Virus record (IMG/VR): IMGVR_UViG_3300042544_001590
Location: 62,001-126,000 of that record
DNA: 64,000 bases
Strand: one strand, 5' to 3'
Every line of letters starts with the position of its first letter. The stretch's first letter is position 1. The notes under the pieces were generated by a model. The model did not search any database, was not told the origin of the DNA, and saw only the letters and a program-made list of their open reading frames with translations. Shown here piece after piece: positions 136 to 50,983 of the stretch. The position numbers and the translations under genes were made by a program.

Positions 136-435
136 CTAATCAGAATGTTCCTTGATATGACATAATCGACAAAGCCAAGTTATATCAAGAGGTTTGGAAT
201 AATCTTTATGATGCATTTCCTCGCCTATCTCACCACATATACAATTTTCGCGCAATATCTTACCACGTTTTAAATATACATTTGCTGTTGATCGTGCATT
301 AGCTTTCAATCGCTGAATATCACTAAGTTCTGAATGTTTGGTTCTATTGATTCGCATCCATTCAGCACGGCATGATTTACACCAACGTTGATTATTAACC
401 CGCTCATTCACTTTACATTTATTACAATATGTCAT
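136..435 (-). CDS. HNH endonuclease, inverted within the cassette array
   Basis: CxxC pairs plus HHKDYSKPLDITWLCRLCH HNH-type motif; AT-rich; TAAGTA-N5-ATG upstream supports a start at 435 rather than 462. Confidence 0.75.
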   Translation of the reverse strand: MTYCNKCKVNERVNNQRWCKSCRAEWMRINRTKHSELSDIQRLKANARSTANVYLKRGKILRENCICGEIGEEMHHKDYSKPLDITWLCRLCHIKEHSD

Positions 436-510
436 AATAATACTTAGAATATTGTTCCACATTTGTATAGTGGAACAAGTGATGTTTAAAAACTAGCCTA
501 GACTGATCAC

Positions 511-648
511 ATGAAGGAACTGCCACCGTGCCACAAAGATTCCCCCCTCCATGATAAATGGCTTGTCATTGTCGCTCAAATGGAGGATGAGGGATGCGAT
601 ACATCCGATGCCCAATCCATAGCCGATATTGAGGTGTTTAAAAACTAG
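511..648 (+). CDS. small hypothetical protein, 45 aa
   Basis: ATG 6 nt after TAGACT of motif copy 487; stop is the TAG of the next motif; below the ORF-track length cutoff. Confidence 0.7.
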   Translation: MKELPPCHKDSPLHDKWLVIVAQMEDEGCDTSDAQSIADIEVFKN

Positions 649-664
649 ATTAAGATTTAGCTAC

Positions 665-830
665 CAATACAACGCCGGAGCCGCTGCGGAGCGGAGTCCC
701 CCGCAAAGGGACATATAAAAAAGCTTTTGTCGTTCGATTCCCGGATGCATACGGGATAGAGCAAGAGGACTAGCTATCCTTGGACAAGACGAAAGCGGAG
801 GGTTCGAAACCTTCCTCGGGCTTCCTTTTC
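665..830 (+). ncRNA. putative structured ncRNA / degenerate tRNA-like cassette
   Basis: Follows a motif copy but has no suitable ATG; T-arm-like GAGGG-TTCGAAA-CCTTC (798-814), anticodon-arm-like GAGGA-CTAGCTA-TCCTT (765-781), GTCCC/GGGAC hairpin. Confidence 0.4.
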
Positions 831-855
831 TTAAAAACTAAACCAGAATAACACC

Positions 856-1026
856 ATGACGAGACAATATACAAACCGACTGCTGGAAATGATCGAAGAT
901 GGTCTGCTTGACAAGGACAACGTGATCATGGCTTGTGTCAAATACATGTCGGAGGACGATGTGGAGGACATGATGAAATGCAACGAATTTCTGGAGGACG
1001 AAGAAGAGGAGGATGAGGACGAATAA
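856..1026 (+). CDS. small acidic hypothetical protein, 56 aa
   Basis: MTRQYTNRLLEMIEDG...EDEEEEDEDE*; motif copy 832 upstream; stop TAA is the start of the next motif. Confidence 0.8.
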   Translation: MTRQYTNRLLEMIEDGLLDKDNVIMACVKYMSEDDVEDMMKCNEFLEDEEEEDEDE

Positions 1027-1050
1027 AAACTAGCGTAAGATAGCCTCACC

Positions 1051-1275
1051 ATGAAACGATACGCCATAAGATCAAAACAAAAGGAAATAGGATATATCAA
1101 ATTTACAGTTCCCACCATTGAAGTATTACATTTCAATTCTCCTTTCTTTCTTGGATCGTGGTGTGCTGACAATGGAACACTGTGGACATGTTTGGATGAT
1201 GGGAAAAACATTTTTGAGAATGAGAATGAAGCCAAGGAAAGATTGGCCGAAATCATCAAGGAATTGTTCGCTTAA
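1051..1275 (+). CDS. small hypothetical protein, 74 aa
   Basis: ORF track; flanked by motif copies. Confidence 0.8.
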   Translation: MKRYAIRSKQKEIGYIKFTVPTIEVLHFNSPFFLGSWCADNGTLWTCLDDGKNIFENENEAKERLAEIIKELFA

Positions 1276-1296
1276 AAACTAGACCAGAATAACACC

Positions 1297-1452
1297 ATGA
1301 TAATCACATACACCGCAAGATACGCAGATGGTGAAAAAGTCACGTTCACGGGAAAATTCGATGACCTGAAAGACTTTGGGAATTTCGCTCACCGTGAGAG
1401 CAAAAGGCCGAATTACAATGGTGATATGTTCATCATCATTAGCATCGTTTAA
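1297..1452 (+). CDS. small hypothetical protein, 51 aa
   Basis: MIITYTARYADG...IISIV*; bounded by motif copies 1273 and 1450. Confidence 0.75.
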   Translation: MIITYTARYADGEKVTFTGKFDDLKDFGNFAHRESKRPNYNGDMFIIISIV

Positions 1453-1476
1453 AAACTAGCCTAAGATTATCGCACC

Positions 1477-1560
1477 ATGAAACAACTCATCCTTGACACC
1501 CTCGCCGCGTTCTTCCTGTTCGCGTTCACTCCCATCGTCCTGTTCATCCTGATCGGATAA
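1477..1560 (+). CDS. single-pass membrane peptide, 27 aa
   Basis: MKQLILDTLAAFFLFAFTPIVLFILIG*; motif copy 1450 upstream. Confidence 0.7.
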   Translation: MKQLILDTLAAFFLFAFTPIVLFILIG

Positions 1561-1593
1561 CCTTTATAAAAACTAGCGTAAGCTCGTAGCACC

Positions 1594-1848
1594 ATGAAAC
1601 TGAAAATAACAAGCACCGCACCAGTCGCAGTCGAAACCTATGTTGAGGGTAATATTGTCCTCGGGCATTTCGAGTACAACGAGGGTGATTCCGCCCTTGG
1701 GGTCAATCCCCACTTTGTCCTTGTCGATGAAGTGTCGGATGACTTCCCAATCCTTTGGGAAGGGCAGGAAGTGACCATTCACAACGGGTGGTTCATCTTC
1801 GATGACGTTCACTTCGGAGAAGTGAAATTCAAGTTCGCCGGATATTAA
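1594..1848 (+). CDS. small hypothetical protein, 84 aa
   Basis: ORF track; motif copy 1567 upstream. Confidence 0.8.
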   Translation: MKLKITSTAPVAVETYVEGNIVLGHFEYNEGDSALGVNPHFVLVDEVSDDFPILWEGQEVTIHNGWFIFDDVHFGEVKFKFAGY

Positions 1849-1925
1849 ACCAACCCCGAAAGGGGTTCAATCCCCCTTATAAAAACTAGCCTAGACTGAT
1901 CTCGTAACCAACACCAACCAACACC

Positions 1926-2165
1926 ATGACCAACAAACAAATCATCGCAAAATTCGTGCAAGGCGCAACCAAGGGCAAGAACAGCCTGAAAAGCATGTTC
2001 ATCGAGGGGGATACCCTTTACTCCTATGGCTATCACTTCCCGCTTGCAAGGCGGCAGGAGGGCGGTTTCTGGGTCAACCCTGACCGTTACAGCGTCACCA
2101 CCTCCAAGCAACAAGGTATGGTTCGCGGAGCCATTGTCAACGCGGGTTTCTCTTTCGTGGCATAA
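1926..2165 (+). CDS. small phage protein with YSYGYHF...YSVTTSKQQ motif
   Basis: ORF track; motif copy 1880 followed by a CA-rich leader (AACCAACACC x2). Confidence 0.8.
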   Translation: MTNKQIIAKFVQGATKGKNSLKSMFIEGDTLYSYGYHFPLARRQEGGFWVNPDRYSVTTSKQQGMVRGAIVNAGFSFVA

Positions 2166-2229
2166 CATGGTGAAAGTCCCCTCTCTCTGGTGGTTCGGAG
2201 AGAGGGGCAAACCATCTTAAAAACTAACT

Positions 2230-2328
2230 ATGAGAGAACTCATTCTTATCCTCGCCGTTGTCGGCTTGCTTGCCTCTGGCTTGTGGCCTTTCGCCCTTGT
2301 CCTGTTTATCCTTTATCTCTGGTTTTGA
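2230..2328 (+). CDS. hydrophobic membrane peptide, 32 aa
   Basis: MRELILILAVVGLLASGLWPFALVLFILYLWF*; variant motif TAAAAACTAA directly upstream. Confidence 0.65.
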   Translation: MRELILILAVVGLLASGLWPFALVLFILYLWF

Positions 2329-2374
2329 CAAGTCGGATTCCTCCTTTTAAAAACTAGCCTAGACTGATTGCACC

Positions 2375-2689
2375 ATGAGCAACTACCCATTGGAAGATAT
2401 CCTCCGCGCCCGTAAAACCACCATCACGGGAGTCCGTGAAAAGAGCTATGGCAAGCTCCATGAAGTCTATGGGGGCGCACCCTGTGACTGGTCAAAGGCA
2501 CAAGGCGCAACCCATACGCTTTACTGTGGGGAAACGTCCGGCTTGTATGGGCGACCCGGAACCGGAACCCGTCCCGCGAAACTCCTAAAAACCGTTCTCT
2601 ACGTGGGGAACGATGTCACCGACGACGACCAAATCATCTGGGACAAGTGGGACATCAAAACCATCTGGGAAAACGCAAATAAAAACTAG
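2375..2689 (+). CDS. hypothetical protein, 104 aa
   Basis: ORF track; stop is the TAG of motif copy 2680. Confidence 0.8.
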   Translation: MSNYPLEDILRARKTTITGVREKSYGKLHEVYGGAPCDWSKAQGATHTLYCGETSGLYGRPGTGTRPAKLLKTVLYVGNDVTDDDQIIWDKWDIKTIWENANKN

Positions 2690-2706
2690 ATTAAGATAGC
2701 TGCACC

Positions 2707-2919
2707 ATGAAAACTCAACAACTTATCCGCCGCCTGAACGTGGTTTTCCGCGATCACAATCTCCCAAAGCAAGAAACGTTTGAAGCTTGTTTTAAGCAAG
2801 CCGAAAGGAATTACTGGCTGAAGGGGAAAGACTTCGTTGCCGCTTGTGAAAGGGCAATGTCCCATGAACAGATTGACAAGGACAACGCGCTTCTCAAAGC
2901 CGCAGGATTCACCGCATAA
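2707..2919 (+). CDS. small hypothetical protein, 70 aa
   Basis: ORF track; bounded by motif copies. Confidence 0.8.
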   Translation: MKTQQLIRRLNVVFRDHNLPKQETFEACFKQAERNYWLKGKDFVAACERAMSHEQIDKDNALLKAAGFTA

Positions 2920-2943
2920 AAACTAGCGCAAAATAGCTGCACC

Positions 2944-3333
2944 ATGAAATACATCGCAAATATAATCCCCACGCTTGAAAAGATCGTTTCTACCCGTGAG
3001 GCGAACAGCGTCCCCTCCCAATTGACAAGGGGAGGGGAAATCAGGATTTACCCCGTCTGGAAAGATGGGGAGAAAGTCAAGGGCAAGCGTTTGCTTTCCT
3101 TCAAGCCCTATGTCCACCCCTCCAAAAGCGCGGAAGAGAATCACCGGAACTTGCAAGCGGAAGAGCAAGCGATCCAATCGGTTTTTCCAAGCTATCGCGC
3201 CCCCTCTCTGGCTCAAATCAAAACCCTTGGAAGCGCAATGAAAGCCATGACAAAGGAAATCTTGCGGGACGGTGCGATTGCCGAAAGGGGATTGCCGAAA
3301 GCAAGTGAAGTGTGGTTCGCTCGCCTTGCATAA
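2944..3333 (+). CDS. hypothetical protein, 129 aa
   Basis: ORF track; bounded by motif copies. Confidence 0.8.
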   Translation: MKYIANIIPTLEKIVSTREANSVPSQLTRGGEIRIYPVWKDGEKVKGKRLLSFKPYVHPSKSAEENHRNLQAEEQAIQSVFPSYRAPSLAQIKTLGSAMKAMTKEILRDGAIAERGLPKASEVWFARLA

Positions 3334-3357
3334 AAACTAGCGTAAGATAGCTGCACC

Positions 3358-3582
3358 ATGAAAACACTGATCGGAACTAAAGTATTACACGGATCGCCCG
3401 GATATCAAACGCCGGAAACCATTGCGGAAATCACCCCGAAAGGGCATGACTTCGAGATGGTTTTCGAGTCGGGATTTTTCTCCACCTTGTCCTTGGATGA
3501 ACTCCATGAACTTCAAGACGATGGGGAAGTCCACTTCAAGGAAACACACGGCGGGTTCACCGTCATCACCCTGACCGCATAA
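3358..3582 (+). CDS. small hypothetical protein, 74 aa
   Basis: ORF track; bounded by motif copies. Confidence 0.8.
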   Translation: MKTLIGTKVLHGSPGYQTPETIAEITPKGHDFEMVFESGFFSTLSLDELHELQDDGEVHFKETHGGFTVITLTA

Positions 3583-3588
3583 AAACTA

Positions 3589-3614
3589 GGGGGGAGCGCA
3601 TCCTACACGCTCAA
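3589..3614 (+). repeat. 26-bp element GGGGGGAGCGCATCCTACACGCTCAA, copy 1
   Basis: Identical to 5078-5103; contains a GAGCG/CGCTC stem. Confidence 0.9.
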
Positions 3615-3650
3615 CGTCCTAGCGTTTAAAAACTAGCCTAAGATACCACC

Positions 3651-3824
3651 ATGACCAAGAAACACTTCGAGATCGTCGCATCCACCATCGCCGCAATGCC
3701 TTCCCATGCTCCAACGCTTCGCACACAGAAGCGTTCATGCGCTCTGGCCTTTGCCGATAGATTCCAAGCGGAATTTCCCCGCTTCAACCGTGAAACTTTC
3801 CTGAAAGCTTGCGGAGAAGCCTGA
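3651..3824 (+). CDS. small phage protein, 57 aa
   Basis: MTKKHFEIVASTIA...FPRFNRETFLKACGEA*; motif copy 3627 upstream. Confidence 0.8.
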   Translation: MTKKHFEIVASTIAAMPSHAPTLRTQKRSCALAFADRFQAEFPRFNRETFLKACGEA

Positions 3825-3856
3825 TCGTATAAAAACTAGCCTAAGATAGCTGCACC

Positions 3857-3997
3857 ATGATAAACAACATGTTATTCACCACCAGCGGCGTAGTCCTTGC
3901 CTATGCCATCACAAGAGATGCTGCCATCGCCATTTCCCAATTTGCTCGTCGTCCCGTTCGCTGGGGTGATGAATTGATTGGAGCAGAATACGCCTGA
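3857..3997 (+). CDS. small hypothetical protein, 46 aa
   Basis: MINNMLFTTSG...IGAEYA*; bounded by motif copies 3830 and 3998. Confidence 0.7.
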   Translation: MINNMLFTTSGVVLAYAITRDAAIAISQFARRPVRWGDELIGAEYA

Positions 3998-4024
3998 TAA
4001 AAACTAGCCTAAGATAGCTGCACC

Positions 4025-4258
4025 ATGAAAACTTACCAATTCAAAGACGGTGAATTCCAATTTTACTACGCGCAATACGGATCGATGGATCGTGACAAGC
4101 GCATCGTATTCCGTGTTCGAGTGGATCGTGACCCCAAGGAAAGGGCAAGAGAGAAGGGCATCACCGGATGGGATCGTATCATTCAAGTCTGGGAAGGACA
4201 AGAGTGGATGATTGATCAGTGGTTTGCCACCCATCAGGGAATGGAAGCCATTGCATAA
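4025..4258 (+). CDS. small hypothetical protein, 77 aa
   Basis: ORF track; bounded by motif copies. Confidence 0.8.
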   Translation: MKTYQFKDGEFQFYYAQYGSMDRDKRIVFRVRVDRDPKERAREKGITGWDRIIQVWEGQEWMIDQWFATHQGMEAIA

Positions 4259-4282
4259 AAACTAGCGTAAGATTACTGCACC

Positions 4283-4576
4283 ATGAAACCGAAAACACAG
4301 AAAGAGATCGCACTGAAAGACGGCAGCACGCTTCCCAAGGGTCTGCCCGTCTCCTTCATCGATGGCAAGGACAGCCGTTGCCTTGTTCACTCGCCAAACC
4401 ATAGCGAGCCGTTACAAGTGCGTATTACAAGCGCATTTAAAGCCCCTTCCATGTCATCCTTGGAACGCTGGTCTTATGATAGCGTGTGTAAGACTCCCAC
4501 GGGCAAGCGGGTAGAGCCGGATGGACATGGCCCGGATGGTAGCCCAAGCTGGTTGCTGGTCTATGGTCTGATCTGA
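4283..4576 (+). CDS. small phage protein with CKTPTG..VEPDG..PDGSPSWL..GLI motif
   Basis: ORF track; bounded by motif copies. Confidence 0.8.
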   Translation: MKPKTQKEIALKDGSTLPKGLPVSFIDGKDSRCLVHSPNHSEPLQVRITSAFKAPSMSSLERWSYDSVCKTPTGKRVEPDGHGPDGSPSWLLVYGLI

Positions 4577-4595
4577 TAAAAACTAGGTTAAAGTA

Positions 4596-4679
4596 TTGCT
4601 ACCATGAAACCTACCTACGAAGAGAAAGAAGCCTCCGTTGCTACCATGAAACCTACCTACGAAGAGAAAGAAGCCGCCG
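4596..4679 (+). repeat. 42-bp tandem duplication including the start codon
   Basis: TTGCTACCATGAAACCTACCTACGAAGAGAAAGAAGCC(T/G)CCG x2, one mismatch. Confidence 0.95.
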
Positions 4680-4795
4680 TTCGTTATGAAAACGATTGGT
4701 CTTGGAAATGCCCATGTCCTCCTGAAGATATCCAAGATGATCACAACTTTATCGCTTGGATCGACAATCACGGGGAGTGGATTTATCTCGGATAA
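4604..4795 (+). CDS. small hypothetical protein with duplicated N-terminus
   Basis: MKPTYEEKEA occurs twice; bounded by motif copies. Confidence 0.75.
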   Translation: MKPTYEEKEASVATMKPTYEEKEAAVRYENDWSWKCPCPPEDIQDDHNFIAWIDNHGEWIYLG

Positions 4796-4819
4796 AAACT
4801 AGCGTAAGATTACTGCACC

Positions 4820-5071
4820 ATGAAAAACAAAATCACCAAGCTGAATCGCCTGTTCCCGAACATCAAAGCCGTCTCCACCGTCGAGTGGGATGGGGAGGAA
4901 GGTGGCATCTGGTTCCGTCAGGAAGGTCGTTGCCATACGGATGGAATGCCATACTTCGATTACTACAACGACGAGCAGCAAGTCCATCCCGAGGTCGAGA
5001 AAGCCCTGAAAGGTATGGGCTTGTATGCGGAGCCATACGATGCCGGAACGTGGATGGCATTTGAAGCATGA
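4820..5071 (+). CDS. small hypothetical protein, 83 aa
   Basis: ORF track; motif copy 4793 upstream. Confidence 0.8.
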   Translation: MKNKITKLNRLFPNIKAVSTVEWDGEEGGIWFRQEGRCHTDGMPYFDYYNDEQQVHPEVEKALKGMGLYAEPYDAGTWMAFEA

Positions 5072-5077
5072 TCAAAA

Positions 5078-5103
5078 GGGGGGAGCGCATCCTACACGCT
5101 CAA
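5078..5103 (+). repeat. 26-bp element, copy 2
   Basis: Identical to 3589-3614. Confidence 0.9.
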
Positions 5104-5135
5104 GCTTTTAAAAACTAGGTTAAGATAGCTGCACC

Positions 5136-5405
5136 ATGATACCATCCACTTACTACTCCCCGCGCCATAACGAAACCTTCACCGTGATTGTGGAGGAAGT
5201 CCAGCCCCATTGGGCGTGTGCAAGGTTCGCCAAGGTGCGGGTTCAGATTGGGCATTACAACTTCACAGGGGAACACTTCGTTGCCCGTGGACATGGCGAT
5301 GCAATGACGTTAGAAGCCGCCTATGAGATGGCGGTGAATGATGTTGAGCGTGTCGATGTCGAAGGTGTCGAGGAAGATTACTTGATGCTTCACGGATGCG
5401 ATTGA
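5136..5405 (+). CDS. small hypothetical protein, 89 aa (last cassette)
   Basis: ORF track; motif copy 5109 upstream. Confidence 0.8.
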   Translation: MIPSTYYSPRHNETFTVIVEEVQPHWACARFAKVRVQIGHYNFTGEHFVARGHGDAMTLEAAYEMAVNDVERVDVEGVEEDYLMLHGCD

Positions 5406-5700
5406 TATATCTAACAGCCCCGCTGGTCTTCGGATCGGCGGGGCTTTTTTTGTGTCGTGATATATACCTGTTAGATATGGCATAGTGTTTGGCATATATG
5501 GGAAAGGCTTCTGTTAGATATGCCATATCTAACTGTTAGGGGGGGGGGCTGCTCAGAATAGCTTAAAAACTAGGGTGGGGGTGGGATGGGGGGTGGTGCC
5601 ATGGCTAAAATATTTTTTATATATTTTTCCCGTTTTTCCCATATGCGCCCATTTGAAAAAAATTTTTTTTATAAAAATACTTAATTTTTCCCATATGGAT
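5405..5700. repeat. noncoding block of direct/inverted repeats, a palindrome and G-runs
   Basis: CTGTTAGATAT at 5468 and 5511, inverted at 5407-5417; palindrome GTTAGATATG-C-CATATCTAAC 5513-5533; TTTCCCATAT twice (about 5636 and 5687) and inverted at 5496-5505; G-tracts 5539-5548 and 5573-5593. Confidence 0.75.
5416..5451 (+). terminator. intrinsic terminator closing the array
   Basis: 13-bp stem AGCCCCGCTGGTC/GATCGGCGGGGCT (two G-U pairs), cUUCGg loop, T-run. Confidence 0.92.
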
Positions 5701-8652: not shown

Positions 8653-8853
8653 TTATTTTTTAAATGCTTTCTGGCAATCCTTTTCGGTGATTCCCAGCTT
8701 TTCGAAGAATTCCCCCAGCGTTATGTCCTTGGCGCAGATACCCACGCAACTGTCATACCACCCTCCGATGGAGAGCCTTTGGGCTGTCTTTGTCCATGTG
8801 ATGTCAATTCCGCTGTATTCCGCGTCCTCCGGTAGATAGATTGTCTTAGGCAT
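8653..8853 (-). CDS. small hypothetical protein
   Basis: ORF track; TTGACA-N16-TAAATT-N6-ATG promoter upstream. Confidence 0.75.
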   Translation of the reverse strand: MPKTIYLPEDAEYSGIDITWTKTAQRLSIGGWYDSCVGICAKDITLGEFFEKLGITEKDCQKAFKK

Positions 8854-8859
8854 GGATTC

Positions 8860-8887
8860 AATTTACCACTTCCTTCCCATTTGTCAA
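8860..8887 (-). promoter_or_regulatory. sigma70-type promoter TTGACA-N16-TAAATT, 6 nt before ATG
   Basis: Same 16-nt spacer at 9820-9847(+), 17682-17709(-), 19395-19422(-), 38490-38517(-), 41680-41707(-). Confidence 0.8.
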
Positions 8888-9819: not shown

Positions 9820-9847
9820 TTGACATCCTTAAAAACTAGGCTATCAT
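9820..9847 (+). promoter_or_regulatory. promoter combining TTGACA, TAAAAACTAG and TATCAT
   Basis: TTGACA-TCCT-TAAAAACTAG-GC-TATCAT places the array motif inside a sigma70 spacer. Confidence 0.8.
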
Positions 9848-9856
9848 GAATCCATC

Positions 9857-10225
9857 ATGGGATTGGCAATTGGATTATCAAAAAGCAGTGACAGCAACTC
9901 AATGCCCCAAACGGCATCAAGTTTAACGATCAATAATTTTCTAAAGATTCCAAAGGAAAAGATTTATGCCCCCAATCCAAACCCTTTCAAGTTCAAGGTT
10001 CTGAGAGAGGAAAAGTTGGAAAGGGGGATGATCCTTCTGGTGAATTACGAGGGATGCACCACTTTCAAGGGAGATAAATTATTATTATTGCGTTGCCACA
10101 TTGATGTGAAATACTTTGGAAAGCTTGATCCCCACATTCTGGGAGACGGTCATATCGTATGTGCGCGATTTGAGCCGACTACGGAAGGATGGAACATGGC
10201 AAGGATGGCTGCAAATTGTTTATAA
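9857..10225 (+). CDS. hypothetical protein
   Basis: ORF track; promoter directly upstream. Confidence 0.75.
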   Translation: MGLAIGLSKSSDSNSMPQTASSLTINNFLKIPKEKIYAPNPNPFKFKVLREEKLERGMILLVNYEGCTTFKGDKLLLLRCHIDVKYFGKLDPHILGDGHIVCARFEPTTEGWNMARMAANCL

Positions 10226-10694: not shown

Positions 10695-10766
10695 CGCCGA
10701 ATATATCAGGGGTAGATAAGCTGGCTCATAACCAGAAGGTCGGGGATTCGAATTCCTCTTCGGCAA
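10695..10766 (+). tRNA. tRNA-Met(CAT), initiator-like
   Basis: Cloverleaf with loop CTCATAA and C1:A72 mismatch; no encoded CCA. Confidence 0.85.
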
Positions 10767-10771
10767 CTTTA

Positions 10772-11374: not shown

Positions 11375-11595
11375 AATTCTCCAAGATTAAAAGATTCTGG
11401 ATCACCAATTTCGGAATGCCTGATATATCCTTCGGTATCCACATCTGCATGGACAAAAGGATTGACATCCACTTTCTCTGGTATATGATCAGCTTTGGCA
11501 GAGTTCCCATCTACGAAGAGAAGGGAAAGCTGTTCGCCGCCAGTAATTCCTATCACACCGGAAGATCGAAACGACTGAGAGCGGGAGTGCCTTAA
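11371..11595 (+). CDS. small hypothetical protein
   Basis: ORF track; 4-nt overlap; stop codon is the TAA of a motif copy. Confidence 0.7.
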   Translation: MKFSKIKRFWITNFGMPDISFGIHICMDKRIDIHFLWYMISFGRVPIYEEKGKLFAASNSYHTGRSKRLRAGVP

Positions 11596-11610
11596 AAACT
11601 AGAATACAAT
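11593..11610 (+). promoter_or_regulatory. TAAAAACTAG-AA-TACAAT promoter, 6 nt before ATG
   Basis: Same architecture as the array motif. Confidence 0.8.
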
Positions 11611-11616
11611 ACGAAT

Positions 11617-12075
11617 ATGAATCAAGAATTAATAACACACGACTCGGAGACACTGAAACATGTCAACGAGGTAAGAAACAACATATGGACTCTGATCAAA
11701 GAGTTGGATCATAGGGCGCAAGTTCATGATGCTTCCAAATTTGAAGAACCGGAGAGAAGTATCTTTGCCAGCAACACTTCCAAATTGGCGAAGACCCAAT
11801 ATGGGACGGATGAATATTCCAAGCTGTTGGAGGAAGTGAAACCAGCAATTGAACATCATTACTCAAAAAACACTCACCATCCCGAACATTGGCCGAACGG
11901 CATTGAGGACATGGATTTACTTGATCTTGTTGAAATGTTAGCAGATTGGGCGGCTGCAACAAAAAGAAATAAGAATGGTAACATCCATAAGTCAATCGAA
12001 CATAATCAGGAGAGATTTAAAATAACACCACAATTATCAAAAATTTTCACAAACACTGTAAATAGATATTTTTAA
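11617..12075 (+). CDS. HD-superfamily-like protein (DUF5662-like)
   Basis: VHDASKF...HHYSKNTHHPEHW...EMLADW pattern. Confidence 0.7.
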   Translation: MNQELITHDSETLKHVNEVRNNIWTLIKELDHRAQVHDASKFEEPERSIFASNTSKLAKTQYGTDEYSKLLEEVKPAIEHHYSKNTHHPEHWPNGIEDMDLLDLVEMLADWAAATKRNKNGNIHKSIEHNQERFKITPQLSKIFTNTVNRYF

Positions 12076-12968: not shown

Positions 12969-12969
12969 T

Positions 12970-14574: not shown

Positions 14575-14606
14575 GGTATTATTTAGTATATTAATTAAAT
14601 ATAGAT

Positions 14607-33617: not shown

Positions 33618-33623
33618 GAGATG

Positions 33624-38483: not shown

Positions 38484-38513
38484 AAGTGGATATTACCACA
38501 ACCGAATAAAATG

Positions 38514-38843
38514 TCAACCCGTGATGACGTAAAGGTGATTATCGAAGAATTTGGACGCTTCCGATTTGTTCAGCATCCGCATTTTCCAATACACCTCTTC
38601 CGTTCGGGGACAGAACGCACTCAGGGCATAATCAAAAATAAATCCCCCGTCCGTGAGCTTGATATCATAAGGATATGAGATTTCCCATTCCTTGACTTCC
38701 CCACTTTCATCAATTTTAAATTTTACGAAATTCTGCTTGGTGTTGAACATTTGTATTTTTCCCTCCCGAATTGTTCGGGAATTTAGAACAAATTTCACAT
38801 CACGGAAAATCAGTTGTTTTAGGTGTTCTTCAATTCTAATCAT
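38514..38843 (-). CDS. hypothetical protein
   Basis: ORF track; operon context. Confidence 0.72.
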   Translation of the reverse strand: MIRIEEHLKQLIFRDVKFVLNSRTIREGKIQMFNTKQNFVKFKIDESGEVKEWEISYPYDIKLTDGGFIFDYALSAFCPRTEEVYWKMRMLNKSEASKFFDNHLYVITG

Positions 38844-39940: not shown

Positions 39941-40700
39941 CGTGTAATATCATATCCTTTCTGTAAATATCCCCATGCTCCCTCCCATCGGCAAACCATT
40001 TGGATGGAAAGTGACAGGTTTTTCTACCAATCAAAGATGCCCACCAAGAGAAAGTGGAATTGCTTCCTACTATGATATCACATTTACTCATTGATGTAAA
40101 TGAATCCAGATCGGAATTGAAAATCGGTATTTGTAATTTAAAATTGGAAAATTCCTCCAACACATGAGCAGGGGAATCTGTAAACCCTACAAGATTGTAA
40201 TTTTCAAATTCATGTAAAAGATGATTAAAATATTCAGTGTTGCAAACGTGATGGATGTTTCTATGAAGCATGTAATCTCCTCGTCTGATATGAACACCAA
40301 CCAATGGAATATGGGAACCCTTCTGAGTCCTAAAAGAAGTATTATCAATATCGGGTAAATTTAACAAAGATATAAATTCATCCTTAACATCCTCGAAATA
40401 TTTCAGGGATTGGAAATACCCATGAAGGGAAACACTCCCATGGACAAAAGGTAATTCATTGTAATTAAATCTTTGCTCATGCACGGGAATGACATCTCTG
40501 GTAAATGGTAAGGAACCATACTCAAAATTGCAAAAGATCGTATCTTTATAGGATAGCACATGATTGCCCTGTCCAGCGTTCCAATTATCGGGAACGATGA
40601 TTAGCTTCTTCCCATGCTTCTTGGCATAGGCGTATCCCGCAGCAATGATGAATAGCTGGTTTCCCAGACCACCAATTGGATGAACGTAACAATTATTCAT
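39933..40700 (-). CDS. GT11 alpha-1,2-fucosyltransferase-like protein
   Basis: GGLGNQLF, GYFQS.KYF, HIRRGDY, SNSTFSWWA. Confidence 0.88.
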   Translation of the reverse strand: MNNCYVHPIGGLGNQLFIIAAGYAYAKKHGKKLIIVPDNWNAGQGNHVLSYKDTIFCNFEYGSLPFTRDVIPVHEQRFNYNELPFVHGSVSLHGYFQSLKYFEDVKDEFISLLNLPDIDNTSFRTQKGSHIPLVGVHIRRGDYMLHRNIHHVCNTEYFNHLLHEFENYNLVGFTDSPAHVLEEFSNFKLQIPIFNSDLDSFTSMSKCDIIVGSNSTFSWWASLIGRKTCHFPSKWFADGREHGDIYRKDMILHDV

Positions 40701-40778
40701 GGAGGTATCTTAACATTCCAAGAAAGGATGTCAAGCGTGTGTTAAAATATGCAAAATCGGACGGAAAACGTCCGTTTT

Positions 40779-41239: not shown

Positions 41240-41674
41240 TTAGTGAATTGGGTAATTATTTTCAAAGTATTCTATGAATTTGGCAGACACCGCATCTTTA
41301 CCATCTTTGATATTATCAAGCTCAATTTTTTCCAAATCTTCAGCCACCCTTTGATATTCGGATTGGGGAATTTTAAATCTTGGTAGGGACAGGATTTTAA
41401 TCCATTTGACTACCAATGGTGTCTTCTCAACATTTGAATATTTTAAATCAAAAATTTTATCGTTATAATAAGCACCCAAATCATCACACAACCAATTTCG
41501 CTCATTATCCCAATAAATACTACCCTCTTCGTTTTTATCAAACCATCCCCTAAACCAATCCAATAAATCTAAACGCTTTGCTGTTTTTTCTTTTGAATAT
41601 GGGGTTTCAACATAAAATGCGTCTATTTCTGCCAATTCGTATGCTTTTTGGATTGCGGTTTCTGATACTGTCAT
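41240..41674 (-). CDS. hypothetical protein
   Basis: ORF track; TTGACA-N16-TAAATT-N5-ATG. Confidence 0.72.
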   Translation of the reverse strand: MTVSETAIQKAYELAEIDAFYVETPYSKEKTAKRLDLLDWFRGWFDKNEEGSIYWDNERNWLCDDLGAYYNDKIFDLKYSNVEKTPLVVKWIKILSLPRFKIPQSEYQRVAEDLEKIELDNIKDGKDAVSAKFIEYFENNYPIH

Positions 41675-41756
41675 GTATTAATTTAACATAATTTTTAAAT
41701 TTGTCAATATTTTTATTGAAATCTGTTTTTGTTCTGATAGTCTGTTAAGTAATAAC

Positions 41757-45493: not shown

Positions 45494-45556
45494 ATATTTG
45501 ACTTTCTATTCACATTGTTCAGGAATTACTTCCTCATAGTGCGGGGTGGAAATTGT

Positions 45557-46444
45557 TTACCTACGGAATGTTTGTTTTTTCAAAACATCCAGATAGGGAT
45601 CAGATTCTTCATCCGTATTAGTATTTATCTTTTCCGTGACAATTTTTTGTTCTTTCACGAAATCGGGCTTATGTTTGCGATTTTGAACCGCTTCTTCCTT
45701 GATGGTTTCCAGTTGCTTTTTCTCTTGTTTTTCGAAAAGGCGAACGGTGTAATCAAAGTTCTCCTGAATGAATTGCAGGGACTTGTCTCCCAGAGCCTTC
45801 TTAACAAAGTTCTTTTTGGTTTCGGGATACTTGGAAGTTCTGGCTTCAAGGAAGAGCTTGACTTCAGACTTGTTCTTGGATTCAGTAAGAACTCTCATGC
45901 TCTTTTCAAGCTCTTCGTTTCTCTTGCGGAGCTTGTCGATTTCGGTCTTGCCTTCCACGATGGCACCCGAAACGGATTCCTTCATGACAGCAAGATCAAT
46001 TGCGAAAACCTTCTTGAGATTTTCCAGAACATTCATCGCAGTCTTATTCTTAACAGCTTGTTTAATATCTGCTGTTGGAACGGACTCTTCAATGAATTCA
46101 TCGAGGAAAGCACTAACGGATTCGGTGAGTTGTTTCTTGAACTTGAGGAGATCACCGTTCTGTTCACGCTCATACTTTTTAATAACCTTGACAAGCTTTG
46201 CGGTCTTATCCCTATCAAAAGCTTCCATGATCTTCTTCATCTTGAGAGTGCGATCCTTATCAACAGATGACATGAGGGTTTTGAGCTTGGATGCATAGAC
46301 ATCATCCTGTTCCAAAAGGGCAGCTTCAACAGCCAGATCAATTTTGGCTTCAAGGGATTCCTGAATCGCCTTTACGGATTCATCACTGAGTCCCAAGCTT
46401 TTTTGGATGTCTTCCGAGAAAAGGTTCGTGCTTTTTTTCTTCAT
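45557..46444 (-). CDS. gp22: prohead core scaffold gp22-like
   Basis: Coiled-coil, E/K-rich, directly upstream of gp23; TAAATA-N5-ATG at 46444. Confidence 0.82.
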   Translation of the reverse strand: MKKKSTNLFSEDIQKSLGLSDESVKAIQESLEAKIDLAVEAALLEQDDVYASKLKTLMSSVDKDRTLKMKKIMEAFDRDKTAKLVKVIKKYEREQNGDLLKFKKQLTESVSAFLDEFIEESVPTADIKQAVKNKTAMNVLENLKKVFAIDLAVMKESVSGAIVEGKTEIDKLRKRNEELEKSMRVLTESKNKSEVKLFLEARTSKYPETKKNFVKKALGDKSLQFIQENFDYTVRLFEKQEKKQLETIKEEAVQNRKHKPDFVKEQKIVTEKINTNTDEESDPYLDVLKKQTFRR

Positions 46445-46481
46445 ATTATTATTTAGAGATTGGGTATGAATTTTTTGAAAA

Positions 46482-47554: not shown

Positions 47555-47586
47555 ATCCTTATTTATTCATAAGGAATACAATTTCA

Positions 47587-48051
47587 TTAATTTAGCTCTT
47601 TTTCCGTGATAATAATGAACTCCATGCCATGTTTCTTTGCAAATTCCTTTGCAAATTTTATCTTGTCTTGTAAGTTTTGGAAAGCCACCTGTTCATATAA
47701 CAAATTCGCCTTCTTCTTACCCTTCCCAGCTTTCGGCTCTTGCGTCTGCTTCCAAGGCTTGACTTCCACCAGATATTTTTTGACAATATCCCCCTCCTGT
47801 ATCTTTACATAAGCGTCCACAAAATAAGTCCGTGTCTTTTGCTGAAGAGTGTCCCTGTAGGGAATTTTAATTTCCTCACTTCCCCACTCCACCACATTGG
47901 GATTATTATCACAAAAACGGAAAAATTTCAATTCCAAACCGGATCGGTATATGATATTATCAATCTTACCGACATATTTCTGAATATTTTTCGGAACATA
48001 AAATCCTTGGTGGAACTTCTTATTCCTTTTTGATAATCCCAAAGAACCCAT
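47587..48051 (-). CDS. gp4: head completion nuclease gp4-like
   Basis: YRSGLE..FF.FCD.NP.V.EWGSEEI.IPY, RTYFVD, EVKP. Confidence 0.88.
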   Translation of the reverse strand: MGSLGLSKRNKKFHQGFYVPKNIQKYVGKIDNIIYRSGLELKFFRFCDNNPNVVEWGSEEIKIPYRDTLQQKTRTYFVDAYVKIQEGDIVKKYLVEVKPWKQTQEPKAGKGKKKANLLYEQVAFQNLQDKIKFAKEFAKKHGMEFIIITEKELN

Positions 48052-48059
48052 GGGAATAT

Positions 48060-48449
48060 TTATTCTTCGATAAGAGGTTCTTCTACAATCACAGGCTCCA
48101 CAATCGCTTCTGGTTCATGTATTTTTTCAGATATTTTTACACCTTCCATACCGAAGGTAATGACCTTCGGTTTTTCTGATTTGCATCTAATATCCATAAC
48201 TCCATTAGATTCTAGAATATCATTGAATGCTGTAGCTGCTTTGAAATGTTTCTCGAATACATCTTCCAAAACTCCTTTTACTAAAAGTTCATTTATAACT
48301 GATTCTAGTCTATCATTAGGCAAACCCCAAAAATATTCAAAAGAATTATTCAATGAGGAAACAGCGACCTTTAAAGCTCTTATTGTATTATCAGCTAATT
48401 TCTCAATCTGACCAATATCTTTTTCTAGTTGTGTTTTGTTTGTAATCAT
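48060..48449 (-). CDS. hypothetical protein
   Basis: ORF track; 4-nt overlap with the fibre-like gene. Confidence 0.68.
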   Translation of the reverse strand: MITNKTQLEKDIGQIEKLADNTIRALKVAVSSLNNSFEYFWGLPNDRLESVINELLVKGVLEDVFEKHFKAATAFNDILESNGVMDIRCKSEKPKVITFGMEGVKISEKIHEPEAIVEPVIVEEPLIEE

Positions 48450-50983
48450 AAATACGTGAGGGTTAACCCTTGTGGGATAAATAAGGATAGATTTAGGTTT
48501 TCGTTTGTTCTACAGCCTACATAGGTTTGAGTTCCAGCAGTTCCAGTTTTCACTGTAGGACCACCGGAAATAGTCTCTATTAAAGTTCTATTATTATAGA
48601 AAGAAACATTTCCTAATCCATCGCTGTAAATTTCGATATAATTTACCGGGTATGGCCATCCCGCCATACTGTAAAGCGGAAGTGTTGTTTGGTTTAATGT
48701 TGTTCCATTATGAACCATTCCATATAACTCTCTATTAAAAATAAATACACCAATCCCCGCCTCAGTAAGTGGTTCAAATGTGGCATTTCCACGGTTGCCA
48801 CCAAATCTTACATATCCTTCCGCATTAGCGGCAATGCTTTGGTTGCTACCGTAAGTATGAGTGATTCTAAATCCAAGAACCAATTCTCTATCGAAGTATA
48901 TACCACTATTTCCATTACTGGCATGAAATCCACCGGGAGGACAATAGGTAAAGGGTGAGTATCCACCCGAATATATAGACGCCCTATTTCCTGAAACTGT
49001 CGAGGTATTGCAAGTAAGGGTATTGGAACTGTAACTAGATGCTGCTCCACTTCCCGAATTAGCAGCATTCCATCCTGTATTCTGATCTATACGAATAGAC
49101 CAACTACCAAATGCCTGAGTATATAAAAGATCACCCAACCTTTTTGTTATAACAGATTCACCCATGGAAGCTGTCTGATTTGGTGAAGTAATCTGGCCAT
49201 TTACAATTACATCGTCCGTGAAGGTCTTATCTCCTGCTATGCTTTGATCTCCTGTATTATATACAAGATTGGCAGCCGAAACGTTATCGGAAAAGTTAAA
49301 AATTGCACCCGAGCCGACAGCATTTAGTGTGACAGCTCCTGTAGCGTCAACTGTTGCGCTGAAGTAGTTAGAATCATCATAACCAACACGTAATTGTTCA
49401 GCGGTGGAGATTGTGTGAAGACGGGCGGAAGGTGATGTGGTTCCTACTCCCACCCTATTATTCGCAGCATCGACAAAAAGCGTGTTGGTATCGACAGTTA
49501 GATTACCTGTAACTGTGCCACCAGATAGTGGGAGATAATCATTTAAGAGGTAAGATAAGCCAAGATACTGGTTAGCAGAAATAGCACCCACCACAGTAAG
49601 ATCACCATTCATGGTTCCCCCATCTTGGTATTGGGTGGCATTGGTTCCTCCACCAGAAGCATAAACCGTTACATATTTGCGAAGATCGGTCTTTACATTC
49701 TCAATCTTGTCATGGATTTTGGTGTTCCATTCCTTCTCAATTGAGTCCCAATCTTTAACAATTTTACCGGATTTCTTTGTTTCCAGAATGTATTCAACGG
49801 GCTTTTCAGCCTTGATTTTACGAATCTCCGTAAGCAATCCATCCCTACTTTCCTGAATCAAATTTTGAAAATACTTCCTAGCTTCATCGGTAATATCAAG
49901 GGTTTCTTCTTTAACTAATTCCAACTTATCATCAAAATAACTTACGACTTCCCGTTCCTTTTCATCCAGCTTTCTTTCAAATTCTTCGGAAATTTGTATT
50001 ACCTTTTTATCAACGTTACCAACACGGGAAAGGGCTTTCTGAACTCCTTTGTTGAGGGAATTGTTGAGTTCAATATTAGCATCCCGAATAGCGGATATTT
50101 CTTTATCAACGCCTTCAAGCAGCGAACGATCTGCTTTCTTATCCAGCTTGGAATTCAGATTATTATCAATTTCTGAAACCTTTTCGTGGATTTCAACCGC
50201 AATATCCCGAAGTTCCTTATCAACTTTCGGATTAATATTCTTTTCCCACAAATCCTTGACCAATTGCTTAATGGACTTGTCAATCAGTTGGGAAGACTTG
50301 CTAAAGTCCTTTTTCAGAGATTCATCAAGGGAATCACGTATCTCTTCAATCTTGTTATCAATCGTTTCCCGAATCTCCGAATATTTCTCATCATTATTAT
50401 CAAAAACCTCTTTTTTGATTCGTTGAGATATGATCGTAAATTCATCAACCAGATTTTCCCGCGCACTTTCTAGATAACTTTCAAGTGCTTTTTTCTTGGT
50501 TTCCGATTCCTCCCGAATCTGTTTGATTTGGCGGGATTTTTTAAGCTCCAATTCCTTTTTGGCAGCGATCAGGGCATTTTTCTTAGCTTCCTGAATCTGT
50601 AAAAGAATCTCGTTTTTCTGATCTTCAACAACTTCGGGGATGAAAATTTCATCATTTTCCGTTATTGTGATGGATTCCTCTTCGATGGAATCCTCAATTT
50701 TGGATTCAAAAATTTCAACGTAATCACTCTGTTCGTTGAACACAACCTCAAATTTCCCTTTGGTAAGAACAAAGGGATAATTCGCTATCTTACCCCCCAT
50801 CTCAACTGGAATAGACACCACCGGATTGCCGTTGTGTTCGGAAATCTTTTCGACTGGATATTTATTCTTGTTTATCTCGACCTCATAGACACCGAAAAAG
50901 ATTTCTGAAAAATCTTGAACTTTGATGATGTTAAGAGGAGAGTCAGTTAAGGTGGGAGACACCTTTTCGCTAAACAATCTCAT
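48446..50983 (-). CDS. long coiled-coil virion protein with fibre-like C-terminus
   Basis: About 440 aa of E/K heptads, then GGTVTGNLTVDTNTLFVDAANNRVGVGTTSP fibre-type repeats; late promoter. Confidence 0.72.
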   Translation of the reverse strand: MRLFSEKVSPTLTDSPLNIIKVQDFSEIFFGVYEVEINKNKYPVEKISEHNGNPVVSIPVEMGGKIANYPFVLTKGKFEVVFNEQSDYVEIFESKIEDSIEEESITITENDEIFIPEVVEDQKNEILLQIQEAKKNALIAAKKELELKKSRQIKQIREESETKKKALESYLESARENLVDEFTIISQRIKKEVFDNNDEKYSEIRETIDNKIEEIRDSLDESLKKDFSKSSQLIDKSIKQLVKDLWEKNINPKVDKELRDIAVEIHEKVSEIDNNLNSKLDKKADRSLLEGVDKEISAIRDANIELNNSLNKGVQKALSRVGNVDKKVIQISEEFERKLDEKEREVVSYFDDKLELVKEETLDITDEARKYFQNLIQESRDGLLTEIRKIKAEKPVEYILETKKSGKIVKDWDSIEKEWNTKIHDKIENVKTDLRKYVTVYASGGGTNATQYQDGGTMNGDLTVVGAISANQYLGLSYLLNDYLPLSGGTVTGNLTVDTNTLFVDAANNRVGVGTTSPSARLHTISTAEQLRVGYDDSNYFSATVDATGAVTLNAVGSGAIFNFSDNVSAANLVYNTGDQSIAGDKTFTDDVIVNGQITSPNQTASMGESVITKRLGDLLYTQAFGSWSIRIDQNTGWNAANSGSGAASSYSSNTLTCNTSTVSGNRASIYSGGYSPFTYCPPGGFHASNGNSGIYFDRELVLGFRITHTYGSNQSIAANAEGYVRFGGNRGNATFEPLTEAGIGVFIFNRELYGMVHNGTTLNQTTLPLYSMAGWPYPVNYIEIYSDGLGNVSFYNNRTLIETISGGPTVKTGTAGTQTYVGCRTNENLNLSLFIPQGLTLTYL

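What the first reader, a model, noticed from the sequence alone, without database searches (positions are those of the whole stretch)
435..50983. Three promoter classes all place the start codon at about +1: an apparently leaderless expression programme
Seen: (a) TAAAAACTAG-NN-TANNNT-N6/9-ATG; (b) TTGACA-N16-TANNNT-N5-9-ATG, always with a 16-nt spacer (8860, 9820, 17682, 19395, 38490, 41680); (c) TAA(A/G)TA-N5/6-start before about 20 structural and late genes. No Shine-Dalgarno motif at the starts inspected. At 9820 and 33624 the TAAAAACTAG box fills spacer positions 5-14 of a -35/-10 promoter, while array copies lack a -35. Known: sigma70 and T4 gp55 promoters start about 5-7 nt after the -10 box; T4 MotA boxes replace -35 at middle promoters; leaderless initiation depends on fMet-tRNA, and an initiator-like tRNA is encoded here. 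Inference: most mRNAs are leaderless or have a 3-nt ACC leader, and TAAAAACTAG is an activator box or extended promoter element that could point to the host lineage.
Basis: partly seen in the sequence, partly recalled or inferred. Interest (0 to 1): 0.65.

Follow-up and report, generated by a model that had tools for sequence, protein, structure and literature searches.

The report
Promoters abutting start codons in phage
In this uncultured 207-kb T4-like lake phage and its relatives, three kinds of promoter sit so close to the genes that the predicted first transcribed base is the A of the ATG, so nearly half of the genes would be read from mRNAs with no leader and no ribosome-binding site; this is unlike T4 and cyanophages, but it is inferred from sequence alone.

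Summary
The window is bases 62001-126000 of a complete 207,489-bp T4-like phage from lake metagenomes.

**Three promoter-like classes, each with its -10 element at -12..-7 from the A of ATG:**
- (a) An invariant W-W-AAAAACTAG box, two bases, then NANNNT. There are 115 copies, almost all on one strand and none with a -35. The start lies 6 nt (68 sites) or 9 nt (14 sites) after the hexamer.
- (b) TTGACA, exactly 16 nt, then TANNNT.
- (c) A gp55-type (C/T/A)TAAATA motif, then N5-ATG.

**Counts and controls:**
- 161 of 355 called starts carry one of these motifs, against 55 of 8,670 other ATGs.
- Shine-Dalgarno words are at background level.
- Run through the same pipeline, T4 and a cyanophage place TAAATA 12-29 nt upstream and do use SD.
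- A relative with about 72% nucleotide identity shows the same layout.

- 55% of genes are tightly coupled internal cistrons.
- The major capsid gene has a conserved 63-nt leader.
- About half of the class b sites are not next to a start codon.

**Open points:**
- No transcript 5' ends could be obtained.
- MotA and AsiA are absent; gp55 is present.
- The box did not identify a host.

The parts
487..5405 (+). Early gene array: 22 box promoters driving small ORFs (27-129 aa), one promoter per gene
   Evidence: Box positions are listed. The median gap to the upstream gene is 21 nt, and the box itself supplies the upstream stop codon in 76 of 114 cases genome-wide.
487..513 (+). Class a promoter, N6 type: box, CC, TAGACT, 6 nt, ATG at 511
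   Evidence: The called gene 511-648 starts at the predicted +1.
639..830 (+). Class a promoter (TAAGAT, then ttagct-ACC) with no ORF, followed by a structured non-coding stretch of about 170 nt
   Evidence: Sequence. Fold energy -61.5 kcal/mol, z -2.44. No Rfam match. ACC is kept without an ATG, which argues that ACC is a transcription start and not a translation signal.
1024..1053 (+). Class a promoter, N9 type: box, CG, TAAGAT, 6 nt, ACC, ATG
   Evidence: It is one of 13 near-identical N9 cassettes in the array: 1024, 1450, 1567, 2348, 2680, 2917, 3331, 3830, 3998, 4256, 4577, 4793 and 5109.
3627..3653 (+). Class a promoter, N6 type, before the 57-aa ORF 3651-3824
5416..5455 (+). Strong intrinsic terminator that closes the early array
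   Evidence: Stem of 13 pairs (9 G:C) followed by a T run. No comparable terminator lies between the array genes, so the transcripts should be nested and co-terminal.
9820..9859 (+). Composite promoter: TTGACA, 4 nt, box, GC, TATCAT, 9 nt, ATG (122-aa ORF)
   Evidence: It shows that the box is compatible with a -35 at a 16-nt spacing.
10695..10767 (+). Initiator-type tRNA-Met (CAU)
   Evidence: C1xA72 is unpaired, A11:U24 is present, and G30:C40 and G31:C39 are present.
11593..11619 (+). Class a promoter, N6 type (TACAAT), before the 152-aa ORF
33615..33641 (-). The only minus-strand class a promoter (TACACT, N6, ATG), with a weak TTGATT upstream
   Evidence: The gene is 33273-33617 (phrog_98).
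8851..8887 (-). Class b promoter: TTGACA-N16-TAAATT preceded by TGG, N6, ATG (66 aa)
17672..17709 (-). Class b promoter, N7, ATG of a thymidylate synthase gene (211 aa)
   Evidence: phrog_85, E 1.5e-60.
19386..19422 (-). Class b promoter, N6, ATG of a 224-aa protein of unknown function
   Evidence: No Pfam or PHROG match.
38481..38517 (-). Class b promoter, N6, ATG (85 aa)
40698..40734 (-).
   Evidence: phrog_2644.
41672..41707 (-). Class b promoter, N5, ATG (144 aa)
14572..14609 (.). Two divergent late promoters in one 32-nt intergenic gap, each TAAATA-N5-ATG (genes 13474-14574 - and 14607-16133 +)
   Evidence: The gap has no room for two leaders with ribosome-binding sites.
32704..32718 (-). 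Late promoter TAAATA-N6-ATG of the portal gene (Gp20 family)
   Evidence: Pfam Portal_T4, E 1.5e-87.
46442..46455 (-). Late promoter CTAAATA-N5-ATG of the 295-aa gene upstream of the capsid gene
50981..50995 (-). Late promoter TAAATA-N6-ATG of the 845-aa gene; this is the upper end of the finding
45494..45556 (-). Exception: a 63-nt intercistronic leader of the major capsid gene, with no promoter motif and no SD
   Evidence: It is almost identical in relatives G004 and G002 although the genomes are about 72% alike. It is not significantly structured, z -0.57.

Best explanation
The phage runs a T4-style early, early/middle and late programme on host RNA polymerase. In all three promoter classes the -10 element sits at -12..-7 relative to the A of the start codon. 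The first cistron of each transcript would therefore be a leaderless mRNA, or one with a 3-nt ACC leader.

How each class is read (inferred):
- Class c is the gp55 late promoter, in the same register as T4's TATAAATA (-13..-6).
- Class b is a standard sigma-70 promoter: TTGACA, a 16-nt spacer, often TGn, then TANNNT.
- Class a is the early class that heads the roughly 60-kb block of small ORFs. It keeps only the two sigma-70 key bases of the -10 (A-11, T-7). In place of a -35 it has an invariant 9-11-bp box at -25..-15. I take this box to be read by the holoenzyme itself as a spacer or extended -10-type element.

Why one promoter per gene: a leaderless cistron must be 5'-terminal, so each small early gene carries its own promoter. 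This cassette is compact. The box also supplies the stop codon of the gene before it.

Other cistrons: they are translated by tight coupling (median gap 1 nt) or by SD-independent internal initiation.

The phage-encoded initiator tRNA would favour 5'-AUG initiation.

Shown: motifs, spacing, enrichment, conservation, lack of SD, presence of gp55. Inferred: the transcription start sites, leaderless translation, and who reads the box.
For: - 161 of 355 independently called starts carry a class a, b or c motif at the fixed offset, against 55 of 8,670 other ATGs.
- Distances peak sharply. Box to start is 14 nt at 68 sites and 17 nt at 14 sites. TAAATA to start is 5 nt at 40 sites.
- In class a, A-11 and T-7 are invariant. 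Position -1 is C or T in 68 of 68 sites and +1 is A, which is the pyrimidine/purine pair RNA polymerase prefers at a start site.
- The motif-adjacent ATG is the first ATG of its ORF in 85 of 86 class a genes and 55 of 58 class c genes. An in-frame stop lies within 30 nt upstream in 83 of 86 class a genes.
- T4's late motif lies at -13..-6 from the start site (PMC1524935). Here the same motif sits at -12..-6 from the ATG.
- With the same pipeline, TAAATA lies 12-29 nt upstream in T4 (SD before 54% of genes) and 19-27 nt upstream in cyanophage S-SM1 (SD 28%). It lies 5 nt upstream in this phage (SD 9%) and in relative G004 (SD 1%).
- Divergent late gene pairs share 30-36-nt gaps, with a motif abutting each ATG, in both genomes.
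- The architecture is conserved in relatives whose early genes share only 30-60% amino-acid identity: 448 boxes, 257 at 14 nt and 52 at 17 nt.
- A gp55 homologue is present.
- No AsiA, MotA or T7-type polymerase was found.
- An initiator-type tRNA is encoded.
- Precedents exist: phage phiYS40 makes leaderless middle and late mRNAs (PMC3594737), and a -10 element adjacent to the ORF drives leaderless genes in Deinococcus (PMC12340547).
Against: - No 5' end was mapped. A 151-nt RNA-library contig of a relative runs 24 nt past the capsid ATG, so read-through or leadered RNA exists there.
- The capsid gene and 194 other genes are not promoter-adjacent.
- About half of the class b sites are 33-119 nt from the next start.
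- One box and -10 directly abut tRNA-Arg at genome 59738, so a start 7 nt downstream would fall inside the tRNA.
- The N9 cassettes are near-identical paralogues and count as roughly one evolutionary event.
- Such complete invariance of a 9-bp box is more typical of a dedicated DNA-binding protein than of a polymerase spacer contact.
- Related loci were fetched with a pattern that already contained the ATG, which inflates the 14-nt count among them.
Confidence: 0.6

Rival explanations
1. The box is the binding site of a phage-encoded or virion-injected activator. Class a would then be a 'middle-like' class that works like sigma appropriation but with an unrelated protein. The class b consensus promoters would be the true immediate-early ones. 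The start codon would still sit at +1.
For: - The core AAAAACTAG is invariant in 115 copies and in diverged relatives, while the neighbouring -10 is degenerate.
- No bacterial genome shows enrichment of the composite motif.
- All box-bearing contigs that were tested belong to one phage clade.
- Class b promoters drive several small proteins with no known family, including a 224-aa one.
Against: - No MotA, AsiA or second sigma was found.
- The box lies in the spacer at -25..-15, where a separate protein would be expected to clash with the polymerase.
- The box coexists with a properly spaced -35 at three sites.
- The genes behind it, small ORFs of unknown function in a single 60-kb block, look like T4 immediate-early genes.
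Confidence: 0.3
2. The motifs act mainly on the RNA or at the level of genome evolution and are not promoters. In this view the box is a stop-and-restart cassette, with TAA and TAG closing two frames and the next ATG 14 nt on reached by terminating ribosomes. It could also be a PeSL-like recombination cassette kept uniform by gene conversion. Real transcription starts would lie far upstream.
For: - The box provides the upstream gene's stop codon in 76 of 114 cases.
- Only one strong terminator ends the window array, so read-through transcripts must exist.
- Repeated promoter cassettes are known to shuffle genes in T4-type phages (PMC4122927).
- Internal cistrons are clearly translated without SD.
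Against: - It does not explain the invariant A-11/T-7 pattern, the pyrimidine at -1, the strand bias, or the class b -35 at exactly 16 nt.
- It does not explain the gp55 motif in T4 register, or its shift relative to T4 and S-SM1.
- The first array promoter (487) and the divergent late pairs have no upstream cistron from which ribosomes could re-initiate.
- The unit at 639 has the promoter and no ORF.
Confidence: 0.1

Closest known systems
T4 late promoters (gp55, with gp33 and gp45)
   Same: A gp55 homologue is encoded. The motif a(C/T)TAAATA precedes structural genes and resembles TATAAATA, or the CTAAATA of Aeh1. It sits in the same register, -13/-12..-6, if the ATG is +1.
   Different: In T4 and cyanophage S-SM1 the motif lies 12-29 nt before the start codon, with an SD in between. 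Here it lies 5-6 nt before it with no SD. gp33 and gp45 were not recognised.
T4 middle promoters (MotA box with AsiA; sigma appropriation)
   Same: Both are -35-less promoters made of a sigma-70 -10 element plus a phage-specific upstream box.
   Different: The MotA box is centred at -30, 12 +/- 1 bp from the -10, and tolerates changes (PMC2988021). This box ends 2 bp from the -10 and is invariant. No MotA or AsiA gene was found.
Thermus phage phiYS40 (leaderless middle and late mRNAs)
   Same: A large myovirus whose transcripts mostly lack leaders and which biases host initiation towards leaderless mRNA (PMC3594737).
   Different: phiYS40 is not T4-like, its host lineage is naturally rich in leaderless genes, and the trait is reported for its middle and late classes. 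Here the early class is included, each early gene has its own promoter, and an initiator tRNA is encoded.
A -10 element adjacent to the ORF in Deinococcus-Thermus and Actinobacteria
   Same: TANNNT a few bases before the start codon acts as the promoter of leaderless genes, and spacing matters (PMC12340547).
   Different: In those genomes the leadered genes carry a clear GGAG motif. Here SD words are only weakly enriched before internal genes, 12.4% against 7.6%. The host is unknown.
PeSL cassettes of T4-type hyperplastic regions
   Same: A repeated early-promoter cassette lies between small novel ORFs and could act as a point of modular exchange (PMC4122927).
   Different: PeSLs combine a terminator stem-loop with a full sigma-70 promoter. 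Here the gaps are about 21 nt with no stem-loop, and the whole window array has a single terminator at its end.

Membership tests
T4-type late (gp55) promoter | Phage encodes a gp55 late sigma | tested here: met
   Genome 132842-133291 (+). phmmer against T4 gp55 gives E 9e-16. PHROG_234 'late sigma transcription factor' gives E 1.9e-23.
T4-type late (gp55) promoter | TATAAATA-like motif upstream of late or structural genes | tested here: met
   58 genes carry TAA(A/G)TA at N4-7, against 17 of 8,670 control ATGs. The window holds 24 sites against 2.06 expected.
T4-type late (gp55) promoter | gp33 co-activator and gp45 clamp present | tested here: inconclusive
   Not found by phmmer with the T4 proteins, by PHROGs on candidate ORFs, or by Pfam PF02916. 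Both are fast-evolving small proteins. gp44 is present.
T4-type late (gp55) promoter | Transcription starts 6 nt after the motif | not testable with these tools
   Only contigs of RNA runs were available, with no read ends.
T4 middle promoter (MotA/AsiA) | Box centred at -30, 12 +/- 1 bp from the -10 | tested here: not met
   The box occupies -25..-15, 2 bp from the hexamer. The criterion comes from PMC2988021.
T4 middle promoter (MotA/AsiA) | MotA and AsiA genes present | tested here: not met
   PF09114 and PF09010 give no match at E <= 1 in the complete genome. phmmer with the T4 proteins finds nothing.
Sigma-70 -35/-10 promoter (class b) | TTGACA and TANNNT at a fixed spacing near 17 | tested here: met
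   30 sites at N16, against 1-7 at each other spacer from 12 to 22. The same holds in G004, with 24 at N16. The spacer is 16, not 17. TGn often precedes the -10.
Leaderless mRNA with the -10 adjacent to the ORF | -10 hexamer 5-9 nt before the start codon and no SD | tested here: met
Leaderless mRNA with the -10 adjacent to the ORF | 5'-terminal AUG (or GUG) start codon | tested here: met
   ATG is the start in 85 of 86 class a genes, 14 of 15 class b genes and 53 of 58 class c genes. The rest use GTG.
Leaderless mRNA with the -10 adjacent to the ORF | Mapped primary 5' end at the start codon | not testable with these tools
PeSL cassette | Terminator stem-loop joined to the early promoter | tested here: not met
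   The median gap is 21 nt, and the window array has one strong terminator, at 5416-5455.

The most novel reading that the evidence does not exclude
A whole clade of uncultured freshwater T4-like phages has abandoned leaders and ribosome-binding sites. The promoter doubles as the translation-start determinant, which forces one promoter per early gene. The invariant AAAAACTAG element at -23..-15 would then be a new kind of promoter element, or the site of a new factor, that replaces the -35 from inside the spacer. Together with a phage-supplied initiator tRNA, this could let the phage favour its own 5'-AUG messages over host messages.
Probability: 0.3. Interest if true: 0.8.

Novelty: new variant of a known kind. 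Interest (0 to 1): 0.62.

Why it matters
T4 is the textbook case of a phage redirecting host RNA polymerase. This clade keeps T4's late sigma but moves every promoter class up against the start codon and drops SD.

If transcript mapping confirms it, three things follow:
- It would be the first T4-type phage with a genome-wide leaderless programme.
- It would give a clean natural system for asking how 5'-terminal AUGs are chosen: more than 100 near-identical promoters with variable -10 elements and downstream sequence.
- It would add a new -35-independent promoter element to the known set.

There is also a practical consequence. Gene finders and promoter scanners that expect SD and -35 elements will misplace starts and miss these promoters. 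The generic sigma-70 scan saw no enrichment here.

Tried and rejected
- **Transcript evidence.** The phage occurs in at least 12 lake or freshwater DNA runs. The three RNA runs are held only as contigs of 90-95% relatives that cover the capsid gene, so they show no starts and no strand.
- **Host from the motif.** A scan of representative genomes gave 21 single hits in unrelated taxa, about the chance number. Only a 2.6-kb contig binned with a Parcubacteria MAG is a phage relative, and I take that as a binning artefact.
- **Host marker genes.** No psbA and no WhiB. Kin genomes cannot be drawn for a virus record.
- **Factors that could read the box.** No MotA, AsiA or T7-type RNA polymerase, and no sigma region 2 other than gp55. 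Pfam and PHROGs on genes behind class b promoters found only a thymidylate synthase, glycosyltransferases, DUF4326 and unknowns.
- **Translation helpers or host shut-off tools.** No S21, peptide deformylase, formyltransferase, RegB or MazF.
- **Literature.** The 10-mer appears only in unrelated papers. No paper was found on leaderless T4-like phages. The phiYS40 primary paper is not held.
- **A repeated leader module.** Four internal class b sites lie about 117 nt from the next start, but they do not align.
- **Megablast** of 12 kb against isolated phages gave no match. The closest capsid proteins are about 33% identical and come from cyanophages.
- **Not run.** Structure prediction and complex prediction were not run, because no candidate box-binding protein stood out.

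Full report
**What the window is.** The 64-kb window is bases 62001-126000 of a single 207,489-bp contig with 39.4% G+C. It is an IMG/VR virus record with direct terminal repeats, rated 100% complete.
- It encodes a T4-type capsid protein (Pfam Gp23, E 1e-82) and portal (Portal_T4, E 1.5e-87).
- It also encodes a family B DNA polymerase, UvsX-, gp41-, gp32- and gp44-like proteins, and RNA ligases.
- The capsid protein is only about 33% identical to the nearest isolates, which are cyanophages. There is no nucleotide match to any isolated phage.
- Near-identical DNA occurs in a dozen lake and freshwater metagenomes.

**Method.** I called genes with a codon log-odds model that uses no upstream information. 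This gave 356 genes covering 92% of the genome. Motifs were then scored against two controls: all other ATGs in the genome, and shuffled sequence.

**Class a: the box promoter.** TAAAAACTAG occurs 88 times on the + strand and once on the - strand, where about 0.2 per strand is expected. Counting the TAAAAACTAA variant gives 115 sites.
- The sites fill genome 7.5-73.6 kb, with five more at 157-165 kb, in front of small ORFs.
- Of 111 sites followed by NN-NANNNT, the called start lies 6 nt after the hexamer at 67 and 9 nt after it at 14.
- The logo of the N6 sites is W(-25), T/A(-24), AAAAACTA(-23..-16), G/A(-15), A-rich(-14), then a hexamer.
- In that hexamer only A(-11) and T(-7) are invariant. 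Then come C or T at -1 in 68 of 68 sites, and the A of ATG.
- A-11 and T-7 are the two bases sigma-70 flips out. A pyrimidine at -1 with a purine at +1 is the usual start-site pair. This is established knowledge, not tested here.
- Nothing is conserved at -40..-26.
- The box's TAA is in frame with the downstream ATG at both spacings, so the ORF cannot extend upstream. 85 of 86 such starts are the first ATG of their ORF.
- The box supplies the stop codon of the preceding gene in 76 of 114 cases.

**Class b.** TTGACA-N16-TANNNT occurs 30 times genome-wide, against 1-7 for each other spacer from 12 to 22. In the window there are 11 sites against 1.04 expected.
- The -10 is often preceded by TGG or TGT, an extended -10.
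- Allowing TTGAC(A/T) gives 40 sites. Seventeen of them have an ATG 5-9 nt downstream that opens an ORF of 64 aa or more.
- Those ORFs include the DNA polymerase, a thymidylate synthase and two glycosyltransferases.
- The other sites lie inside early genes, 33-119 nt before the next start, so some leadered transcripts must exist.

**Class c.** TAAATA and TAAGTA lie 5 nt before the called start at 48 sites and 6 nt before it at 8.
- In all, 58 genes carry the motif, against 17 of 8,670 control ATGs. Most are structural genes.
- The consensus a(C/T)TAAATA matches the T4 late motif, which lies at -13..-6 from the transcription start (PMC1524935).
- A gp55 homologue is encoded outside the window.
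- Divergent late gene pairs share gaps of only 30-36 nt, with a motif abutting each ATG. This is seen in this genome and in relative G004.

**No Shine-Dalgarno.** SD 4-mers precede 11% of starts, against 12% of random positions.
- None of the class b or class c genes has one.
- The 194 genes without a promoter motif have 12.4%, against a 7.6% background.
- Those 194 genes are mostly downstream cistrons: 177 have a same-strand neighbour, with a median gap of 1 nt.

**Controls.** The same pipeline was run on four genomes.

| Genome | Genes with an SD word | Distance from TAAATA to start |
|---|---|---|
| T4 | 54% | 12-29 nt |
| Cyanophage S-SM1 | 28% | 19-27 nt |
| This phage | 9% | 5 nt |
| Relative G004 | 1% | 5 nt |

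The shift of the late promoter onto the start codon is therefore specific to this clade. It is not an artefact of the method.

**Conservation.** A pattern scan of viral contigs found more than 113 stretches.
- They range from 65-100% nucleotide identity down to unalignable DNA with 30-60% protein identity.
- They hold 448 boxes, 257 with an ATG at 14 nt and 52 at 17 nt. The fetch pattern already contained the ATG, so one hit per stretch is by construction.
- Relative G004 (184 kb, 35.6% G+C, T4-type capsid) was fetched whole. It shows all three classes, with the box written TTAAAAAACTAG, so the invariant core is AAAAACTAG.

**Interpretation.** The simplest reading is a three-class, T4-like programme in which the first cistron of each transcript is leaderless. 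This explains why each small early gene has its own promoter.
- The window array, 487-5405, has 22 promoters and a single strong terminator at 5416-5455. Its transcripts should therefore be nested and co-terminal.
- The initiator-type tRNA-Met at 10695-10767 fits this reading, because leaderless initiation depends on initiator tRNA. That dependence is established knowledge.
- What reads the box is unresolved. Its position in the spacer, and its coexistence with a properly spaced -35 at 9820, genome 22011 and genome 46175, argue for recognition within the holoenzyme.
- Its total invariance, and its absence from bacterial genomes, argue for a dedicated factor.
- MotA, AsiA, a second sigma and a phage RNA polymerase were not found.

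**Limits.**
- No 5' ends are available.
- The capsid gene has a conserved 63-nt leader without SD, so SD-independent internal initiation also operates.
- One box and -10 abut a tRNA gene.
- The N9 cassettes are paralogues.
- The host is unknown. The lack of SD even at internal genes does not fit the usual picture of Actinobacteria or Deinococcus. The -10 and -35 consensus does not fit what I recall of Bacteroidota promoters; that comparison rests on memory and was not tested.

**Prior knowledge.** Leaderless phage transcripts are known for phiYS40 (PMC3594737). ORF-adjacent -10 promoters are known for Deinococcus (PMC12340547). Repeated early-promoter cassettes are known in T4-type phages (PMC4122927). 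I found no report of the box, or of a leaderless T4-type phage.

Noticed in passing
window 657-830 (+): A structured non-coding stretch of about 170 nt lies under a class a promoter and ends in a T-arm-like hairpin (GGGTTCGAAACC). Fold z is -2.44. There is no Rfam or ARAGORN hit. It is a candidate phage small RNA or a degenerate tRNA-like element.
   Followed up: partly
window 45494-45556 (-): The 63-nt region before the major capsid gene is almost identical in relatives that are otherwise about 72% alike. It has no SD and no late motif. It may be a translational enhancer or a processing site for the most abundant protein.
   Followed up: partly
L170:1-230 and the last 100 bases of the genome (outside the window): A 57-bp unit is repeated in tandem at both genome ends: copies at 1, 58, 115 and 172, and at 207395 and 207452. 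It forms the terminal repeat or the assembly wrap-around.
   Followed up: no
window 26887-28572 (+) and 41757-43208 (+): Two large paralogous HNH/homing-endonuclease-like genes (phrog_559, E 3e-165 and 4e-123) are present. One has a weak Mom-like domain. The second sits behind a late-type promoter between structural genes.
   Followed up: no
window 12881-13472 (+): A cluster of six tRNAs includes several that are unusually long: Lys 88 nt, Tyr 87, Thr 85, Gln 80. tRNA-Tyr and tRNA-Pro fell below the Rfam gathering score.
   Followed up: no
window 3590-3613, 5087-5108 and 5574-5597 (+): A repeated G-rich element (GGGGGAGCGCATCCTACACGCTC, two copies) and a long G-run tract follow or precede boxes that lack a -10. 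Their role is unknown.
   Followed up: no
genome 59720-59814 (outside the window; in L172): A box plus TAGAAT directly abuts the first base of tRNA-Arg, between two tRNA genes. A start 7 nt downstream would fall inside the tRNA. Either this copy is inactive or it uses the overlapping TAGCAT hexamer.
   Followed up: partly
L137 (2.6-kb contig of a Parcubacteria MAG): This fragment of a related phage (48% amino-acid identity to a G000 protein) is binned with a candidate-phyla-radiation genome. That is most likely a binning artefact and not a host signal.
   Followed up: partly
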